Of a DNA stretch of 61,059 bases, positions 3,975-61,020 are shown piece by piece (the first letter of the stretch is position 1; each line of letters begins with the position of its first letter). Below the pieces are notes generated by a model. That model had not been told where the DNA came from. It searched no databases and worked only from the letters and a program-made list of their open reading frames with translations. The stretch covers positions 46,671,752 through 46,732,810 of the forward strand of contig NC_068986.1 in the NCBI RefSeq assembly GCF_001194135.2. The letters run 5' to 3'. This DNA is from Octopus bimaculoides (lineage: Eukaryota). A program made the translations under genes and the position numbers.

Positions 3975-4461
3975 GTATTGACAGCCTTTGAGAAAGAGGG
4001 AAAAACCTCCACGTCGAAACAAAACTGCAGAAGAAAACCAAAACTTTCAGCTAGGGACCATTGATCTCTTATGCGAATTGTTAGAAAGGATCACAAAAGT
4101 ACAGATCCCAAAATTACTGCAGAGCTTAATGGCCACCCCGAGAACCCAGTTTCCCCATAAACTGTTCAGCGGGAGCTGCACAAAGCCGGATTTCACGGGA
4201 GGGCTGCAATCAGAAAACCACTATTTTCAAAAACAAACGTTGCAAAGCGTTTAGAGTGGAGTAAAAACCTACCAATTTGGTCCCTAAAGCAGTGAAAAAT
4301 ATTATTTTCTCGGACGAGTCATCCTTTATCTTATTTCCGACCACCGGCCGAATATACGTGTGGAGACAGTTTTAGCTGAAGAATGGACAAAAATCCCTTT
4401 GGAAACAATTCAAACTTTGTACGAGTCTATGCCTCGTAGAATTGAAGCTGTAATTACTGCC
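3975..4461 (+). mobile_element. Tc1-family transposase remnant with large internal deletion
   Basis: TAFEKEGKTSTSKQNCRRKPKLSARDH*SLMRIVRKDHK...TVQRELHKAGFHGRAAIRKPLFSKTNVAKRLEWSK...IIFSDESSFILFPTTGRIYVWR fused directly to the C-terminal ETVLAEEWTKIPLETIQTLYESMPRRIEAVITA; then runs into an N gap. Confidence 0.92.
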
Positions 4462-31042: not shown

Positions 31043-31320
31043 AATAAATTATAGGGCAGCAACAAAAATTTTAGAAATTTTATTTACCACCAGTGGTCTA
31101 GCGAGAATAAAAATCAGTCAATAGGCTATATATTATTCATTTAAAATACAGAGATGCCTATAACAGGACATCTGACCCGCTAGAAAGAGCAGCAAAAGAC
31201 TACATACCACAAAAATAGGGATAATTTCGAAATTATCCTTATTTTTGTGGTATGTAGTCTTTTGTTGCTCTTTCTAGCGGGTCAGATGTCCTATTATAGG
31301 CATCTCTGTATTTTCAATGA

Positions 31321-31322
<2 letters not shown>
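31043..31322. repeat. Foldback fragment of the 466-nt hammerhead repeat family
   Basis: 94-bp arms (31135-31228 / 31229-31322, 4 mismatches) with no spacer, centred on TTCGAA; sequence matches 58558-58757. Confidence 0.92.
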
Positions 31323-31351
<29 letters not shown>

Positions 31352-31369: not shown

Positions 31370-32850
31370 CCCCATTTTTTAGGAGGAGCTCACCACAAGA
31401 CACACATCAGGGGTTCCATTCATTTCCCAGCTCAAAGAGGCGAGCCATGTTCTATACTCAGGTCAAGGCGTAGAATGCAACGCCCGATATCAGCAGCGGG
31501 GCCCGACAGCATCCGCTAGTTTACCCCCGCCGCATCATGCAACATCAATTTCACTCATCCAGCCACAAACACTCTCCAAGATTTCCTATCATTTGTAAAC
31601 TACCTTGCCTCTCTCACTCCTACACCTCTAACCACTAAAGCTTTCCTCATTTCATCCATCCACACAAACCGAGGTCTGCCTCTGGTTCTGCTGCTTACCA
31701 CTTCTGCCTTCATCATCTTCCTTACCATCCGCTCCTCATCCATTCTCTTCAGTCGACCAAATCTCATCAACATTCGTCTTTTCTGAAACAACTGACTCTC
31801 CTGTAATTTCTCTATTTTTCCCACCATTTGGGCTCTCCTACTAAAGAATCTAGCATTTACCTCTCTCACCACATCATCCATATATAAATTAAACAGCCAA
31901 GGAGACATCACATAACCATGTCTTAACCCCATACTTACATCAAACCACTTACTTCGCCATCCACCCTAACGCACGCCCTACATTCTCTATAAAAATTTTA
32001 CAACACTCAACAATCTACCTTCTACTTCATGCAATCGCAACACATGTTACACTGCATCTATGTCTACACGGTCATATACCCTCTGTAGGTCTATAAAGGT
32101 CTAATACACCTCCCTCCTTTTTGCCCAAAACTTCTCACACATTGCCTTACAACAAATATTTGATCTGCACACCCACTTCCTCTCATAAAACCGCACTGTT
32201 CCTCCCCTAGTACACTCTCTGCCTGGTTCTTTACCCATACAGTTTACCAACCACACACAACAGACTTGTACCCCTAAAATTTCCAAACTCACACTTATCC
32301 CCATCCCCCTTGCACAGTGACACTATACAGGCACTGCACCAGTCCTTTGGTACTCTTCCAGCCATATTACAACCATTCACAAGTGCCACTAACCATTCAA
32401 TCACTGTTACTCCTCCTTTCTTTAAGCATTCTACTGTACACACATCTATATCTGGCACCCTCCGATTTGCAATCTTCCACAAGGATTCCTTCACCTTCTC
32501 CCTTCCAATTGCACCATAGTTCCATTCCCCAACAACAGGCATTCTTCTCTTTCCTCCCACAGCCACCATACTTGCCTCCCTAACATCCTCCACATTTAAC
32601 AGCTCACTAAAATACTCTGCCCATCTCCTTTGTGCACCCTCACTTCCTTTCAGCAAATTTCCATTTACATCTTTCATCCTTTCTTCCCTTCTACCAACCC
32701 TCCTTGTTACAGTCTGTACCTCTTTCCAAAACATCTTTTTATTTTTTACAAAATGTTCACTCAACTTTTTCCCGAACCTTTTACTCGCCTCTAATTTCGC
32801 CACCCTCACCACTCTCTTTAATCTCCGCTCCACATCTCTTTAGCGATCAT
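31370..32850 (-). mobile_element. RTE-clade LINE, 5'-truncated and internally deleted
   Basis: ORF 32231-32833 (KKMFWKEV...RRWAEYFSELLN...VPKDWCSACIVSLCKG...NFRGTSLLCVVGKLYG), then GLRHGYVMSPWLFNLYMDDVVRE...SQLF fused to the C-terminal RGRPRFVWMD and a 3' UTR. Confidence 0.93.
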
Positions 32851-39452: not shown

Positions 39453-40374
39453 ATATTTTCCTAAATTGCATATATTGAATTATATATAATATTCCATTTC
39501 GTGCAACATTTGGATATATGTTTTTCTAAATTTCGATTTTCCATGGCAAGTATAATATAAGAATCATATTAGATTAAGTAGGAAACTTTCGTGACGAAAC
39601 ATTACATTTTGAAACTGCTATCTAGTTTATATTGTTATAACTTAGCAAGAAATTACTGTAACAATTAAATCATGATAATGGTTTCCTGTTGCAATCTTCC
39701 CACAAATCAGTATTAATGAATCGGATTTATGATCAACAGCATTTCAACAGTACCGTCCCATCCTATCATCAAATAGTTATTCACTTTTAAGATGGTAAGG
39801 TGTGATATGATGGAGATAGATTTGGCTATTTCTATCAAGTCTAGAGACCACGTAGTTCACCCTACTTTTGTTTCAAGTACATTTGTTTCAATATTTAACT
39901 AAAATAATGCCATCGAAACTTTAGCTTCAATTTTAATAATATTCCTCTGAACTTCCATGAATTTTTCCCCTTCCAATTGGCTTTCACGAGCCCAGACTTT
40001 TTCTGCTGAAAAGTACATTCAAACTTATTTCAGAAATATGGTTATTGTGTTCCTATAATTAATATTACCCACCTGCTTATTGGCTCATCGAATTCATTCT
40101 TTTTATTTTTTTCGTTTTTCATCGAGAACCGCATACAATTATTCTCATGTAGTTTGTACAGTGACAATTCGGATTTGACAGCAGTTTCGAAATTAAGGCA
40201 ACCTGTCTCATTTAATTAAGTCTCTTGTGCCAAAACGAAAACCTCATTTTTTATGTCTATTTGAAGCCAATTTTCTTTCCGTTGTAGCACATCGGTTTTA
40301 TGTAATGTGTGTGTGTGTGTGAGTGCGCATGAAGTGTATGTATACATATATATATATATATATGTTGACCACGA

Positions 40375-42274: not shown

Positions 42275-43040
42275 ATATAAATACAGTGTACATTTAAACA
42301 CATAAGATGTATCCGTCATATGATTCCTTGTACGCTAGAATGAACAGCTAAAATCCAAACCACTATTTAGGAATAAACGTCGAAGGGAATGAAAAATAAA
42401 AACATTTACCATCTATCTCCTTTTAGCAGGTCCTTCTAGCGTGCAAGGAATCCTATGACGGATACCTCTTATGTGTTTAAATGTACACTGTATTTATATG
42501 AATAATATATAGTCTATTGACTAAATTTTTTTACACGCTAGGCCATTGGTAGTAGAAATTTCTAATATTTCTTATCTTGATATTATTAATTATTGATAAT
42601 TTTTTCAGGAAAATTTTCGATTGAAAAAGCCGGCATTTTTATTTACTACCGACAAGGAGCTGTGCTTGCGCGGTAGATTTGAAAAATTAGAACGTTAAAA
42701 TTAGAATGTTAAAAATTAGAATGAAAAATTAGAATTAGAAGCACGGGGCATATGCTGGATTGCCTCGTACTTATATGTTTAATCTAGGTGTACCTGCAGA
42801 CGAAGACATCGTCTGACAAATTATTTTACTTGCTAAAAAATGTCTGAAACCATGGTCCAGGAGATAAATGGTAAATGTTTTTATTTTTCATTTCCTTCGA
42901 AGTTTATCCCTAAATAGTGGTCTGGATTTTAGGTGTTCCTTCTAGCCTGCAAGGAATCCCATGACGGATACCTCTTATGTGTTTAAACGTACAGTGTATT
43001 TACATGAATAATATAGTCTATTGACTAAATTTTTTTACAC
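42275..43040 (+). mobile_element. Hammerhead-bearing repeat (retrozyme-like): ~506-nt period plus 5' inverted arm
   Basis: Direct repeat 42421-42535 ~ 42927-43037; inverted arm 42275-42421; related to 58116-58757; internal (AAAATTAGAA..)x4 expansion at 42682-42738. Confidence 0.82.
42793..42861 (+). ncRNA. Type I hammerhead ribozyme with one core substitution (U4A)
   Basis: CCTG-CAGACGA-AGACA...TGTCT-GAAA-C-CATG-GTC-CAGG. Confidence 0.78.
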
Positions 43041-56893: not shown

Positions 56894-57390
56894 GATGTAT
56901 GTATGTATGTATGTGTGTATGTGTGTATGTATGTAAGTATGTATATGCGCGTGTGAATGTATAAATAATATGGGTGGCTAATTCGCAATTTTACAACCTA
57001 AAGGTAGAAGTATATACGTCAATAGAGTGACAAAGGACACTAATCAGCACCAGTATTGCTAGAAATAAAAGCCAAAACAACTCAGCAGCCACAGAAACAC
57101 TATCTTAATGTCTGACAAAGGAGGCAATATATCTACGGCTGCAGATATAGCCAGATCATCGATGATTTTGTATGTTGATACTAACGCATCTCAATACTCA
57201 TCTTAATGACTGACAAGGGAGGCAAGGTCCCTAGTGATAGTTTATTAATATTTGAAATGCCAGTAAACAAGTAAGCTGTCTAGCGTATAACAGAATTTCG
57301 TCGTTTTTATTTAATTAATTTTATAATTGATTATTCTTTGACCATTGAGATTAGACATGGAAGTAGTGGTATGTCTGCCATAATTATATA
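56508..57390 (+). repeat. ~140-bp direct repeat Y (56508-56650 and 57248-57390)
   Basis: ATATTTGAAATGCCAGTAAACAAGT...ATAATTGATTATT...ATAATTATATATA occurs twice, each copy ending in (TA)n. Confidence 0.85.
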
Positions 57391-57830
57391 TATATATATC
57401 TTAATGACTGGCAAAGGAGGCAATCTCTCCACGGCCGCAGATACAGCCAGATCATCGATGATTTCGCATTTTGATGCTCACGCATCTTAATGCTCATCAG
57501 TGGCTCGCACCGCACCTTGGGTTAAACTCAGCTCACCTTGTCAGCTTATAAGATTTCCCTTGAAATTACACGCTGATTGCATAAACGGTTAAAGTGAAAA
57601 TTATAAATGATATGGGTGGTTAATTCACAATTCTACATTAAGATGCATTAGCATCAAAATGCGAAATCATCGATTTAACTATATCTGCGGCCGTGAGGCG
57701 TTTTGCCTCCCTTGTCAGTCACTAAGATAGTGCTTTTGTGGCTATTGAGTTGTTTTAACTCTTATTTCTAGCAATACTGGTACTTATTAGTGCCCTTTGT
57801 CACTTTAGTGATGTATATATTTCTGGCATT
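56960..57830 (-). mobile_element. Rearranged cluster of a ~346-nt hammerhead-bearing repeat (retrozyme-like family H1)
   Basis: Copies at 56960-57203 (decayed HHR), 57399-57637 (intact HHR) and an inverted partial copy at 57636-57830. Confidence 0.82.
57445..57505 (-). ncRNA. Intact type I hammerhead ribozyme
   Basis: AGCCA-CTGATGA-GCAT taag ATGC gtga GCAT caaa ATGC-GAAA-TCATCGATGA-TC-TGGCT; all core residues present; predicted AUC cleavage between 57450 and 57449. Confidence 0.9.
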
Positions 57831-58115
57831 TTATATATANNNNNNNNNNNNNNNNNNNNNNNNNNNNNNNNNNNNNNNNNNNNNNNNNNNNNNNNNNNNN
57901 NNNNNNNNNNNNNNNNNNNNNNNNNNNNNNNNNNNNNNNNNNNNNNNNNNNNNNNNNNNNNNNNNNNNNNNNNNNNNNNNNNNNNNNNNNNNNNNNNNNN
58001 NNNNNNNNNNNNNNNNNNNNNNNNNNNNNNNNNNNNNNNNNNNNNNNNNNNNNNNNNNNNNNNNNNNNNNNNNNNNNNNNNNNNNNNNNNNNNNNNNNNN
58101 NNNNNNNNNNNNNNN

Positions 58116-58757
58116 GTATAGAGTTTTTTGCTGCTCTTTCTAGCGGGTTAGATGTCTTATTATAGGCATCTCTATATTTTAAATGAATAATATATATGTA
58201 GTCTATTGAGTAATTTTTTATTCTCGCTGGACCACTGGTGGTAAATTAAATTTCTAAAATTTCTTTTCCTTCCCTATGATTAATAATGATATTATATTTT
58301 TTGGCTAATTTCTGAAAGAAAATCGGCATTTATTTTACATTTACTGCCGATTAGTTAATGCGCACATGCGTGGTTAAGTCTTGAGAAATTAAGCATGTAA
58401 ACTGGAGTCAGGTTCTTTCCTTGGCTCGTGTTTACACGCTAATCCGGCACTCTGCTGACGAAAGCGCCCGAGTTAGATATACTTTTATCTTACTAAATAG
58501 CTTGAAACCATGGTACAGAGTATAGACTGGTAAAAATGTTTTTATTTTTCATTCTCCTTCGAAATTATCCCTATTTTTGTGGTATAGAGTTTTTTGCTGC
58601 TCTTTCTAGCGGGTTAGATGTCCTATTATAGGCAACTCTATATTTTAAATGAATAATATATATGTAGTCTATTGACAAATTTTTTATTCTCGCTGGACCA
58701 CTGGTGGTAAATTAAATTTCTAAAATTTCTTTTGCTGCCCTATGATTAATAATGATA
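58116..58757 (+). mobile_element. 466-nt tandem hammerhead-bearing repeat (retrozyme-like family H2), about 1.4 units visible between gaps
   Basis: 58116-58290 repeated at 58582-58757 with near identity; begins at an N gap, ends in (TA)n. Confidence 0.85.
58449..58521 (+). ncRNA. Intact type I hammerhead ribozyme
   Basis: ACTCTG-CTGACGA-AAGC...GCTT-GAAA-C-CATG-GTA-CAGAGT; 6-bp stem I; predicted GUA cleavage after 58515. Confidence 0.88.
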
Positions 58758-58760
58758 TGT

Positions 58761-58811
<51 letters not shown>

Positions 58812-58813
58812 TA

Positions 58814-58860
<47 letters not shown>

Positions 58861-60084
58861 NNNNNNNNNNNNNNNNNNNNNNNNNNNNNNNNNNNNNNNN
58901 NNNNNNNNNNNNNNNNNNNNNNNNNNNNNNNNNNNNNNNNNNNNNNNNNNNNNNNNNNNNNNNNNNNNNNNNNNNNNNNNNNNNNNNNNNNNNNNNNNNN
59001 NNNNNNNNNNNNNNNNNNNNNNNNNNNNNNNNNNNNNNNNNNNNNNNNNNNNNNNNNNNNNNNNNNNNNNNNNNNNNNNNNNNNNNNNNNNNNNNNNNNN
59101 NNNNNNNNNNNNNNNNNNNNNNNNNNNNNNNNNNNNNNNNNNNNNNNNNNNNNNNNNNNNNNNNNNNNNNNNNNNNNNNNNNNNNNNNNNNNNNNNNNNN
59201 NNNNNNNNNNNNNNNNNNNNNNNNNNNNNNNNNNNNNNNNNNNNNNNNNNNNNNNNNNNNNNNNNNNNNNNNNNNNNNNNNNNNNNNNNNNNNNNNNNNN
59301 NNNNNNNNNNNNNNNNNNNNNNNNNNNNNNNNNNNNNNNNNNNNNNNNNNNNNNNNNNNNNNNNNNNNNNNNNNNNNNNNNNNNNNNNNNNNNNNNNNNN
59401 ATATATATATATATATATATGCAGACTATAGATGAGACCGGGGTATACTCAGTAGAGAAACCCCTTGTTCAGACTGAATAAGAGGTTTGTTTATTTCATA
59501 TTTTATATTTTACATTTTAATTTTCATTAAATTAATTTTGGTATTTTTTATCATTTGCATCACTTTGTATTTCCTTGGAGATCTTTGTCAAGAATTCTAA
59601 AGATAGAATATGGGTTCAAAGCATTGAGAGACTATAAATGATCCAGCAGTGCTTCCGAATCCACTCACTTGAAGGTCTTCATTTATGCAACTACAGTTGG
59701 ATTATATTAATGCAATAATCTTTTACATATGTGTACCACTCATCAGTTCATACTTAGTTGACACTAATGCACAAAACCATCTGTAGTGATTTAGATTAAG
59801 CCCTGCTTTTTTCCATCTGTATTAAAATTCTATTGTTTGAATTCTACGGGTATTAACGGAACTCCATATGTATATCCTGTAAATGGAGAATTGTTGCAAT
59901 ATGATAGGCGTATTACAGCCGGTACTTACAGAGGAGCTTTAGAAAGCACGCTCTAAGATTATTACTCAGATAATATATCTATATCAATAATGGTATTTAA
60001 ATAAGTTTTAAGCGTGTATACATACCATTATTATTATTTACAGGATCGTAAAATTTTGTACTGTATAACAAAACCATGTATATA

Positions 60085-60485
60085 GGCGCCGGCGTGGCTG
60101 TTAAGAAACTTTCTTCTCAACCACGTGTTTCCTGGTTCAGTCCCACGTTGTGAGACCTTAGGCAAGTGTCTTCTACTATAGTTTAAGGGTCAACAAAGGC
60201 TTGAAAGTGAATTTGGTTGATGAAAACTGAAAGAAGCCCGTCGCATATATATATACACACATATATATATACTTGTGTATATATAAATATATATATATTT
60301 GTGTGTGTGTCTTTGTTTTTGTACTTGTCACCCACCATCGCTTGACATGTTTTCACGTCCCTGTAATAAGTAATAAACTTTAAAAATTAACTCCTGGGGT
60401 CGATTCATTTGACTAAAATTATTCAAAGTCATGCTCCAGCATGGCCGCTGTCTAACGACTGAATCAAGTAAAAGATAAAAGATAC
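60085..60485 (+). mobile_element. SINE family B, full length
   Basis: GGCGCCGGCGTGGCTG...GGTTCAGTCCCA...GAAAGAAGCCCGTCG, microsatellite, tail ending CAAGTAAAAGATAAAAGA. Confidence 0.88.
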
Positions 60486-60879: not shown

Positions 60880-61020
60880 AGGCGTTCCTGTGTCGCAAGA
60901 GGTTTATTTTCCAACCATATGGCTTCGGGTTCAGTCATACTGTCTTCTACTATAGCCGGTCCAAAGCCTTGTGGGTAGGTTTGGCAAACACAAATTGAAA
61001 GACGCCTGTCGTATGTATAG
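60880..61020 (+). mobile_element. SINE family B head
   Basis: AACCATATGGCTTCGGGTTCAGTC...GTCTTCTACTATAGCC...AAAGCCTTGTG. Confidence 0.78.

What the first reader, a model, noticed from the sequence alone, without database searches (positions are those of the whole stretch)
58116..58757. Second, unrelated retrozyme-like family (H2): 466-nt tandem repeat with an intact hammerhead
The near-identical tandem unit (period 466) carries ACTCTG-CTGACGA-AAGC[..]GCTT-GAAAC-CATG-GTA-CAGAGT: 6-bp stem I, 4-bp closed stem II, palindromic ACCATGGT stem III and a GUA site. It lies about 1 kb from the H1 ribozyme on the opposite strand and shares no obvious sequence with it outside the core. The array starts at an N gap, so more units may be hidden. 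A head-to-tail transcript would self-cleave into 466-nt monomers, slightly larger than the retrozyme size range I know.
Basis: partly seen in the sequence, partly recalled or inferred. Interest (0 to 1): 0.9.

Follow-up and report, generated by a model that had tools for sequence, protein, structure and literature searches.

The report
Hammerhead ribozyme in a retrozyme-like repeat
A complete self-cleaving hammerhead ribozyme motif sits in a 466-base non-coding mobile repeat of an animal (probably cephalopod) genome; this is a new family of an already described kind of element (animal retrozymes / non-autonomous Penelope-like elements), not a new kind.

Summary
Segments 58116-58292 and 58582-58758 are 97% identical and 466 nt apart, inside one ungapped contig. 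A complete type I hammerhead motif lies at 58449-58521 (+), with cleavage predicted after A58515. My descriptor finds two such motifs in the window (this one and H1), against 0.01 expected per shuffled window.

A 64%-identical relative at 42421-43040 (506-nt unit) has the same 73-nt motif without indels. GAAA and ACCATGGT are invariant, and four helix pairs changed on both sides, but its core carries U4->A and is probably dead. A third copy lies at 31044-31335.

All three loci are non-coding, AT-rich and next to microsatellites. They are built as partial tandems and/or inverted 5'-truncated copies, the known signature of Penelope-like element integration. I read H2 as a non-LTR retrozyme, that is, a non-autonomous Penelope-like element.

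Caveats:
- Only 1.38 units and one ribozyme are assembled, so release of a 466-nt monomer depends on what the upstream gap hides.
- No Rfam hammerhead model detects it.
- It has an A10.1-U11.1 pair and a 34-nt helix II insert.
- Folding predicts it works as a dimer.
- 466 nt is within published size ranges.

It is a new member of a known kind, of moderate interest.

The parts
57840..58115 (.). Assembly gap (276 N) at the 5' side of the H2 locus. An upstream ribozyme copy, if the unit continues, would fall at about 57983-58055.
   Evidence: the position is arithmetic (58449-466 to 58521-466)
58116..58292 (+). First copy of the repeated segment. It is the 3' part of an upstream, partly hidden unit and is analogous to a pseudo-LTR.
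   Evidence: family D2: 177 nt, 97% identity, spacing 466
58292..58757 (+). One complete 466-nt unit in element register (head TATATTTTTTGG..., tail ...GATTAATAATGATAT). It is non-coding and 33% GC.
   Evidence: The 3' terminus is shared with the independent copy that ends at 31044.
58444..58447 (+). Closing stem of helix I, 5' strand (CCGG). It pairs with CTGG 58527-58530, beyond an internal loop.
   Evidence: MFE and centroid fold
58449..58454 (+). Hammerhead helix I, 5' strand (ACTCTG)
58455..58461 (+). Catalytic core C3-A9 (CTGACGA)
58462..58503 (+). Helix II: AAGC/GCTT (4 bp, with A10.1-U11.1), closed by a 34-nt insert that folds into a 5x5 internal loop plus a 3+5 bp hairpin
   Evidence: base-pair probability 0.76-0.88 in the whole-locus transcript
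58504..58507 (+). Core G12 A13 A14 plus A15.1 (GAAA)
58507..58514 (+). Helix III plus loop: the 8-nt palindrome ACCATGGT (2 bp plus a CATG loop in cis; an 8-bp duplex between two copies)
   Evidence: invariant in the divergent copy
58515..58516 (+). Predicted self-cleavage site, GUA|C (after A58515)
   Evidence: position in the motif; not tested experimentally
58516..58521 (+). Hammerhead helix I, 3' strand (CAGAGT)
58582..58757 (+). Second copy of the repeated segment (the end of the complete unit)
58758..58860 (.). Compound microsatellite (TA)n(CA)n(TATC)n abutting the 3' end of the element; the likely target site
42275..42421 (-). H2-family locus 2: inverted 5'-truncated copy. Its 5' end corresponds to A42859, 1-2 nt after the predicted cleavage site.
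   Evidence: inverted pair I1: 147 nt, 90%
42421..43040 (+). H2-family locus 2: 1.22 direct units of 506 nt, about 64% identical to H2, flanked by microsatellites on both sides
42791..42863 (+). Homologous hammerhead of locus 2: CCTG-CAGACGA-AGACAT...ATGTCT-GAAA-CCATGG-TC-CAGG. The core carries U4->A, so it is probably inactive.
31044..31335 (.). H2-family locus 3: head-to-head pair of 5'-truncated copies lacking the ribozyme. The centre is at TTCGAA 31228/31229, and microsatellites lie on both sides.

Best explanation
H2 is one insertion of a non-coding, non-autonomous retroelement of the animal 'non-LTR retrozyme' kind. These elements are now viewed as non-autonomous derivatives of Penelope-like elements (PLEs). 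The unit carries a type I hammerhead ribozyme.

Proposed mechanism, with the status of each step:
1. Copies are transcribed through more than one unit (inferred).
2. The ribozyme cuts after GUA58515, giving 5'-OH and 2',3'-cyclic phosphate ends (inferred from the motif).
3. Helix III is only 2 bp in cis but is an 8-nt palindrome. Cutting is therefore expected mainly when two ribozymes pair as a double hammerhead in multimeric RNA (folding shown here; activity inferred).
4. Unit-length RNA is circularised by a host RtcB-type ligase (literature, PMC7229834).
5. Circular or multimeric RNA is copied by a PLE reverse transcriptase/GIY-YIG endonuclease supplied in trans. Integration is into microsatellite DNA, with internal initiation. 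This gives longer-than-unit partial tandems and inverted 5'-truncated copies (the genomic layout is shown here; the enzyme is inferred).

The 58-kb copy has a consensus core and may be active. The 42-kb copy is a decayed relative.
For: Motif and statistics:
- Two hammerhead motifs are found, against 0.01 expected per shuffled window, and 0 of 400 shuffles reach H2's quality.
- The geometry is helix I 6 bp, helix II 4 bp, helix III 2 bp plus a palindromic tetraloop. This is what PMC4209133 describes for canonical metazoan type I hammerheads.
- The local MFE and centroid fold is the hammerhead three-way junction.

Family comparison:
- The 64%-identical copy aligns over the 73-nt motif without gaps. 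GAAA and ACCATGGT are invariant.
- 4 of 14 pairs changed on both sides and 89% of cells are paired. Structures with the partners slid by 1-3 columns give 18-42% paired.

Dimer mode:
- Two copies cofold as a double hammerhead at -51.4 kcal/mol, against 2 x -19.0 for monomers.
- In a modelled tandem dimer the 8-bp inter-copy helix has probability 0.9-0.99. Cis helix III has probability 0.

Element features:
- No ORF longer than 35 aa.
- 33% GC, and a circular monomer fold with z = -2.5.

Integration signature:
- Three loci within 57 kb of sequence: partial tandems of 1.38 and 1.22 units, an inverted 5'-truncated copy abutting the 5' end, and a head-to-head pair.
- 4 of 5 visible ends lie within 15 nt of a microsatellite, against a 12% background.
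- Two independent insertions share one 3' terminus.
- PMC8557442 lists the same features for PLEs, including the assembly problems they cause.

Literature: retrozymes are AT-rich non-coding repeats with type I hammerheads (PMC7229834). They are related to PLE pseudo-LTRs and their consensus lengths span 51-972 bp (10.64898/2026.07.22.740005).
Against: - Only one ribozyme per locus is assembled, so no monomer can be excised from what is visible.
- No Rfam hammerhead model reports H2, even at E <= 10 on a 121-nt stretch.
- The 10.1-11.1 pair is A-U rather than the usual G-C. From my own knowledge of hammerhead mutagenesis, this is expected to lower the cleavage rate.
- Helix II carries a 34-nt insert whose distal hairpin is not conserved in the relative.
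- In the actual single-ribozyme transcript, helix I has a probability of only 0.12.
- The covariation rests on two sequences, and 33 of 500 shuffles reach the observed count.
- No PLE reverse transcriptase was recognised among the few ORFs I screened. Of those, only one short RT-like fragment matched, and I judged it LINE-type from its motifs, which is my own reading.
- No relatives could be fetched from outside the window.
- No expression or cleavage data exist.
Confidence: 0.68

Rival explanations
1. The element is real, but the ribozyme no longer works here. The family descends from a hammerhead-bearing PLE pseudo-LTR, and the loci in this window are dead-end insertion relics that make no circular RNA.
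For: - There is one ribozyme per locus.
- The 42-kb copy has U4->A and folds otherwise.
- The 31-kb copies lack the ribozyme entirely.
- H2 has A10.1-U11.1 and gets no Rfam hit.
- Helix I has low probability in the single-copy transcript.
- In vitro, PLE hammerhead cleavage was not needed for insertion, and no reads ended at the cleavage site in vivo (PMC11167929).
Against: - The 58-kb copy keeps every invariant core nucleotide, all three helices and the palindrome, while 48% of the motif's columns differ between the two family members.
- The two repeat copies are 97% identical, which suggests a young insertion.
- The inverted copy at 42 kb begins 1-2 nt after the cleavage site, as expected if a cleaved RNA was the template.
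Confidence: 0.2
2. The hammerhead-like motif is a chance match inside an ordinary interspersed or satellite repeat.
For: - No Rfam hammerhead hit.
- The local fold z-score is only -1.1.
- The permissive 34-nt helix II insert makes the descriptor looser.
Against: - 0 of 400 shuffled windows yield a motif of this quality, and the mean is 0.01 even for the looser form.
- The core and palindrome are the best-conserved part of the motif in a 64%-identical relative.
- There are four double-sided pair changes and no indel over 73 nt.
- A second, unrelated hammerhead with the same palindromic helix III design lies 1 kb away.
Confidence: 0.04
3. The 466-nt duplication is an assembly artefact, for example two haplotypes or collapsed reads placed in tandem next to gaps.
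For: - The locus is bounded by two N gaps and is only 745 bp long.
- PLE-type insertions are known to upset short-read assemblies (PMC8557442).
Against: - Both copies lie inside one ungapped contig and differ at about 3% of positions.
- A gap-free second locus shows the same partial-tandem layout with a 506-nt period.
Confidence: 0.04
4. H2 is the pseudo-LTR of an autonomous Penelope-like element whose coding region is hidden in the gaps.
For: - Hammerheads sit in PLE pseudo-LTRs (PMC4209133).
- Gaps flank the locus.
Against: - The gaps are 276 and 540 N, too small for a PLE body, which is 3.4-4.4 kb in the Naiad clade described in PMC8557442.
- The second repeat copy runs directly into a microsatellite.
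- The gap-free 42-kb locus has a 506-nt unit with no ORF longer than 27 aa between its repeats.
Confidence: 0.03

Closest known systems
Metazoan non-LTR retrozymes (Cervera & de la Pena 2020, PMC7229834; Li, Clavereau & Pollet 2026 preprint, 10.64898/2026.07.22.740005)
   Same: - A non-coding, AT-rich unit of a few hundred nt arranged head to tail.
- One type I hammerhead per unit.
- No LTR.
- Several unrelated families can coexist in one genome.
- The monomer is predicted to be more structured than shuffled sequence.
   Different: - Only 1.38 units are visible here, whereas arrays run from dimers to 62-mers in the coral example.
- Helix II has a 34-nt insert and an A10.1-U11.1 pair.
- No RNA evidence is available.
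- The host is probably a cephalopod, for which my literature search found no retrozyme report.
Penelope-like elements and their pseudo-LTR hammerheads (PMC4209133, PMC8557442, PMC11167929)
   Same: - Partial-tandem insertions.
- An inverted 5'-truncated copy at the 5' end.
- Ends in microsatellites.
- A hammerhead with a weak, palindromic helix III suited to dimers.
- Hammerheads on opposite strands within 1 kb.
- A defined 3' terminus that is not the RNA end, consistent with internal initiation.
   Different: - No RT/GIY-YIG ORF in the unit, so H2 is non-autonomous.
- H2's ribozyme has full-length helices I and III, unlike the 'minimal' PLE variants.
- No 30-40-bp 'tail' was identified.
Dimeric satellite hammerheads of newts and the axolotl (HHR_Amex1, described in PMC7229834)
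   Same: - Type I topology.
- Helix III too weak in cis, with a palindromic loop.
- Efficient cleavage is expected only as a double hammerhead in multimeric transcripts.
   Different: - The sequence is unrelated.
- H2 has 2 bp plus a tetraloop, like HHR_Amex2 and invertebrate ribozymes, rather than 1 bp.
- The loop 1 / loop 2 tertiary contacts conserved in amphibians cannot be recognised in H2.
H1 hammerhead element in the same window (57445-57505, minus strand)
   Same: - The same design: CUGAUGA...GAAA plus a palindromic helix III (ATCATCGATGAT).
- It sits in a locus built of a direct partial tandem (period 296) plus an inverted copy.
   Different: - No sequence similarity outside the core.
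- The unit is shorter.
- H1 is weakly recognised by Rfam HH9 (22.5 bits, below the cut-off of 52), whereas H2 is not recognised at all.

Membership tests
Hammerhead ribozyme (type I) | Conserved core C3-U4-G5-A6-N7-G8-A9 ... G12-A13-A14 ... H17 | tested here: met
   CTGACGA 58455-58461, GAA 58504-58506, A17 at 58515
Hammerhead ribozyme (type I) | Three helices around the core, with an A15.1-U16.1 pair, open at helix I | tested here: met
   Helix I 6 bp, helix II 4 bp, helix III AC/GT with A58507-T58514. The MFE and centroid fold give helices I and II. 0 of 400 shuffles match.
Hammerhead ribozyme (type I) | Helices supported by covariation among relatives | tested here: inconclusive
   4 of 14 pairs changed on both sides and 89% of cells paired, against 18-42% for slid controls. 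Only two sequences were available, and 33 of 500 shuffles reach the count.
Hammerhead ribozyme (type I) | Scores above threshold with a curated Rfam hammerhead covariance model (clan CL00010) | tested here: not met
   No hit at gathering score, none at E <= 10 in 1961 nt, and none in 121 nt. The likely causes are the 34-nt helix II insert, A10.1-U11.1 and the 2-bp helix III.
Hammerhead ribozyme (type I) | Loop 1 / loop 2 tertiary contact | not testable with these tools
   Internal loops follow helix I (6 bp) and helix II (4 bp) at the canonical distances. The contact cannot be assessed from sequence.
Hammerhead ribozyme (type I) | Site-specific self-cleavage | not testable with these tools
   Needs an in vitro transcription assay.
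Metazoan non-LTR retrozyme | Head-to-tail repeats of a unit of a few hundred nt, each with a type I hammerhead | tested here: inconclusive
   A 466-nt period is shown, but only 1.38 units and one ribozyme are assembled, and the rest is hidden by the gap. The second locus has 1.22 units.
Metazoan non-LTR retrozyme | Non-coding, low GC (below 45-50%) | tested here: met
   Longest ORF 35 aa; 33% GC
Metazoan non-LTR retrozyme | Monomer RNA predicted to be stably self-paired | tested here: inconclusive
   Circular fold -102.5 kcal/mol, z = -2.5, 59% paired. This is better than shuffles but is not a compact rod.
Metazoan non-LTR retrozyme | Expressed as linear and circular unit-length RNA | not testable with these tools
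   No transcriptome is available here.
Penelope-like element (integration signature / non-autonomous derivative) | Partial tandem (pseudo-LTR), often with an inverted 5'-truncated copy at the 5' end | tested here: met
   58116-58757 (1.38 units); 42275-42421 inverted plus 42421-43040 direct; 31044-31335 head to head
Penelope-like element (integration signature / non-autonomous derivative) | Insertion bias for microsatellites | tested here: met
   4 of 5 visible ends lie within 15 nt of an array, against 12% of window positions. The binomial P is about 0.001 (my calculation).
Penelope-like element (integration signature / non-autonomous derivative) | RT plus GIY-YIG endonuclease ORF | tested here: not met
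   No ORF in the unit. Of five window ORFs screened against Pfam, only one short RT-like fragment matched. I read it as LINE-type from its motifs, and the rest of the window was not screened. H2 can therefore be at most a non-autonomous derivative.
Penelope-like element (integration signature / non-autonomous derivative) | Sequence homology of the unit to the pseudo-LTR of an autonomous PLE in the same genome | not testable with these tools
   No eukaryotic genome collection is on hand. External scans found nothing homologous.

The most novel reading that the evidence does not exclude
H2 is an active, previously undescribed retrozyme family of a cephalopod that produces circular RNA. Its hammerhead (A10.1-U11.1, 34-nt helix II insert, obligate dimer) escapes every curated hammerhead model, which would imply that animal ribozyme censuses based on those models undercount. 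In addition, the inverted copy that begins 1-2 nt after the cleavage site would be a genomic footprint showing that ribozyme-cleaved RNA serves as a template for Penelope-type integration.
Probability: 0.3. Interest if true: 0.5.

Novelty: new member of a known kind. Interest (0 to 1): 0.35.

Why it matters
If active, H2 adds a retrozyme family in a lineage where my literature search found none reported. It would be a natural hammerhead that tolerates a long helix II insertion and an A-U pair at 10.1-11.1, and that curated covariance models miss.

The three loci in one window also make a compact case study. They link hammerhead-bearing non-coding repeats to Penelope-type integration: partial tandems, inverted truncated copies, microsatellite targets and a fixed 3' terminus. 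This supports the recent proposal that animal retrozymes are non-autonomous Penelope-like elements. None of this changes the current picture. It extends it.

Tried and rejected
- **Rfam scans.** Neither the gathering-threshold scan nor the permissive scans gave a hammerhead hit for H2. The mir-297, mir-1277 and mir-466 hits are microsatellite artefacts.
- **TRF.** It did not list the 466-nt repeat, because there are fewer than 2 copies.
- **Exact-protein look-ups.** I tried the 34-aa ORF over the ribozyme, a LINE ORF and the Octopus protein P0022, hoping to fetch more genomic DNA of the host. None was on record.
- **Family-specific DNA pattern scans.** Scans of metagenome and viral contigs gave 0 hits.
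- **Looser ribozyme-only pattern.** This gave 3 metagenome hits and 1 bacterial-genome hit. That is about the number I estimate by chance. None is homologous outside the forced bases. Only L001, a 51% GC bacterial contig, has a helix I, and its helix II is non-canonical.
- **Family covariance model R1.** It found only the two known ribozymes. The hit at 39531-39599 (E = 0.65) lacks the core and has no flanking homology.
- **PBS-like string.** TGGTATAGAG at 58579-58588 resembles a tRNA-Met primer-binding site (my recollection of plant retrozymes). It is not conserved in the other copies, so I dismissed it.
- **RT fragment beside the 31-kb copy.** It matches RVT_1 only weakly. Its motifs look LINE-like to me, not PLE-like.
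- **H1 and H2 as parts of one element.** Rejected: H1 sequence is absent from the other H2 loci.

Full report
**Setting.** The window is eukaryotic scaffold sequence: 34% GC, 14 N gaps, 85 microsatellite arrays covering 8% of the bases, and LINE and SINE debris. A LINE-type ORF at 32231-32833 has its highest-identity named relative (67%) in Octopus bimaculoides. The SINE-like repeats at 60060-60240 and 60880-61010 resemble octopus SINEs as I remember them. A cephalopod host is therefore likely but not proven.

**The observation.** The segments 58116-58292 and 58582-58758 are direct repeats of 177 nt, 97% identical and 466 nt apart (blastn). Both lie in a single ungapped 745-bp contig between the gaps 57840-58115 and 58861-59400. 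The copies differ at about 3% of positions. This argues against a scaffolding artefact.

The second copy stops at 58757, where a (TA)n(CA)n(TATC)n microsatellite begins. Only 1.38 units are visible.

The hammerhead motif is exactly as described:
- Helix I: ACTCTG 58449-58454 with CAGAGT 58516-58521
- Core: CTGACGA 58455-58461
- Helix II: AAGC/GCTT around a 34-nt insert, 58462-58503
- GAAA 58504-58507
- The palindrome ACCATGGT 58507-58514
- A17 at 58515

**Is it more than chance?** I wrote a hammerhead descriptor and ran it on both strands. It finds two motifs in 61 kb: H2, and H1 at 57445-57505 on the minus strand. In 400 dinucleotide-preserving shuffles of the window, the strict descriptor gave 0.01 hits per window. 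A looser one gave 0.035. None of the 400 shuffles matched H2's helix lengths.

The local minimum-energy and centroid folds form helices I and II of the hammerhead junction, plus a closing stem (CCGG 58444-58447 with CTGG 58527-58530) beyond an internal loop. Helix I of 6 bp, helix II of 4 bp, and helix III of 2 bp capped by a palindromic tetraloop is the geometry given for canonical metazoan type I hammerheads (PMC4209133).

**Relatives inside the window.** BLAST and nhmmer found two more family loci.

*Locus 2 (42275-43040).* It has a 506-nt unit about 64% identical to H2. It is again present as a partial tandem of 1.22 units, 42421-43040. An inverted 5'-truncated copy (42275-42421) abuts its 5' end, and microsatellites lie on both sides.

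Its hammerhead homologue (42791-42863) aligns to H2 over all 73 nt without a gap:
- GAAA and the ACCATGGT palindrome are invariant.
- The cleavage triplet is GUC instead of GUA.
- Helix II reads AGACAT/ATGTCT instead of AAGC/GCTT.
- Helix I reads CCTG/CAGG instead of CTCTG/CAGAG.

Four of the 14 pairs changed on both sides. 89% of cells are paired, against 18-42% when the partners are slid by 1-3 columns. With two sequences this is supportive rather than conclusive, since 33 of 500 shuffles reach the same count.

The relative's core is CAGACGA. A change at the invariant U4 should inactivate it (my knowledge of hammerhead mutagenesis), and its predicted fold is no longer a hammerhead. It is a decayed copy of a lineage whose ribozyme was once maintained.

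*Locus 3 (31044-31335).* This is a head-to-head pair of 5'-truncated copies without the ribozyme. The pair is centred on TTCGAA at 31228/31229, between microsatellites.

A covariance model built from the two ribozymes finds nothing further in the window.

**What kind of element is it?**
- The unit has no ORF above 35 aa and is 33% GC.
- As a circle it folds at -102.5 kcal/mol, z = -2.5 against shuffles, with 59% of bases paired.
- Four of five visible element ends lie within 15 nt of a microsatellite, against 12% of window positions. I calculate a binomial P of about 0.001.
- Two independent insertions (58757 and 31044) end at the same unit position, about 242 nt after the cleavage site.
- Two other ends (31335, 42275) fall in the unit's internal AATAATATATAT stretch and continue as (TA)n.

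Partial tandems forming pseudo-LTRs, an inverted 5'-truncated copy at the 5' end, microsatellite targets and resulting short-read assembly breaks are the features listed for Penelope-like elements (PMC8557442). Hammerheads lie in their pseudo-LTRs (PMC4209133), and reverse transcription starts internally on the RNA (PMC11167929).

Animal non-LTR retrozymes are AT-rich, non-coding, head-to-tail repeats with type I hammerheads, expressed as circular RNAs (PMC7229834). A 2026 preprint relates them to PLE pseudo-LTRs and reports consensus lengths of 51-972 bp (10.64898/2026.07.22.740005). H2 fits this kind, and 466 nt is inside the published range.

**How it probably works.** Helix III in cis is 2 bp and is never predicted to form (probability 0).
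- Two copies of the motif cofold into a double hammerhead through an 8-bp ACCAUGGU duplex, at -51.4 against 2 x -19.0 kcal/mol.
- In a modelled tandem transcript, that inter-copy helix has probability 0.9-0.99 and helix II about 0.8.
- In the transcript of the locus as assembled, with one ribozyme, helix I reaches only 0.12.

I therefore expect cleavage mainly in multimeric RNA, as for newt and axolotl ribozymes and PLE ribozymes. The later steps are taken from the literature and are not shown here: ligation by a host ligase, copying by a PLE enzyme in trans, and integration at microsatellites that yields longer-than-unit copies.

The insertions at 58 kb and 42 kb run continuously across the cleavage site. 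Their templates were therefore uncleaved multimers or religated circles. The inverted copy at 42 kb begins at the equivalent of A42859, 1-2 nt after the predicted cut C42857|C42858. This is what a cleaved template would leave, but it is one case noticed after the fact.

**Reasons for caution.**
- No Rfam hammerhead model detects H2 at any threshold tried. H1 gets only 22.5 bits against HH9.
- The A10.1-U11.1 pair, shared by both family members, departs from the usual G-C.
- The distal hairpin of the helix II insert is not conserved.
- The visible locus has one ribozyme, so release of a 466-nt RNA requires a second one. That would sit at about 57983-58055, inside the 276-N gap.
- No PLE coding sequence turned up among the ORFs I screened.
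- I could not obtain any sequence of this family from outside the window.

**Verdict.** The finding is real and correctly recognised. It is a new family of a known kind of element, with some atypical ribozyme features, and its activity is untested.

Noticed in passing
window 57006-57824 (H1 ribozyme at 57445-57505, minus strand): The H1 locus has the same layout as H2. There is a direct partial tandem (57101-57202 and 57397-57498, period 296) plus an inverted arm (57636-57824 against 57006-57195). Only one copy keeps CUGAUGA...GAAA. Helix III is the 12-nt palindrome ATCATCGATGAT. The Rfam HH9 hit is weak (22.5 bits, cut-off 52). H1 sequence occurs nowhere else in the window.
   Followed up: partly
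window 42421 / 42857-42859: The inverted 5'-truncated copy at the 42-kb locus starts at the equivalent of A42859, 1-2 nt after the predicted hammerhead cleavage site (C42857|C42858). This would be expected if a ribozyme-cleaved RNA had been reverse-transcribed to its 5' end. It is a single case, noticed after the fact.
   Followed up: partly
window 58757, 31044, 31335, 42275: Two independent insertions end at the same unit position, about 242 nt after the cleavage site. Two others end in the unit's internal AATAATATATAT stretch and run on as (TA)n. This suggests preferred start sites for reverse transcription, or microhomology with (TA)n targets.
   Followed up: partly
window 31600-31932 and 32231-32833, minus strand: Reverse-transcriptase ORF fragments lie 265 nt from the 31-kb H2 copy. 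They match RVT_1 only weakly, and I judged them LINE-type from their motifs. The highest-identity named relative (67%) is an Octopus bimaculoides protein, which hints at a cephalopod host.
   Followed up: partly
window 60060-60240 and 60880-61010: Two copies of a SINE-like repeat (GGTTCAGTC...CTTCTACTATAG...GAAAGA.GCC.GTCG). Each is followed by a microsatellite. They resemble octopus SINEs as I remember them.
   Followed up: no
window 4360-4461: A short ORF fragment (ETVLAEEWTKIPLETIQTLYESMPRRIEAVITA) looks like the C-terminus of a Tc1/mariner transposase and runs into a gap.
   Followed up: no
L001 1144-1234 (metagenome contig Ga0153915_10552576, 51% GC): An intergenic stretch of a bacterial contig holds CTGACGA...GAAACCATGGTT, with a 5+8 bp helix I but a non-canonical helix II. 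It was found only because the search pattern forced these bases, and it is not homologous to H2.
   Followed up: partly
window 56903-56965 and 58753-58829: Rfam mir-297, mir-466 and mir-1277 matches (about 42 bits or less, far below cut-off) fall on TG/TA microsatellites. They are composition artefacts.
   Followed up: yes
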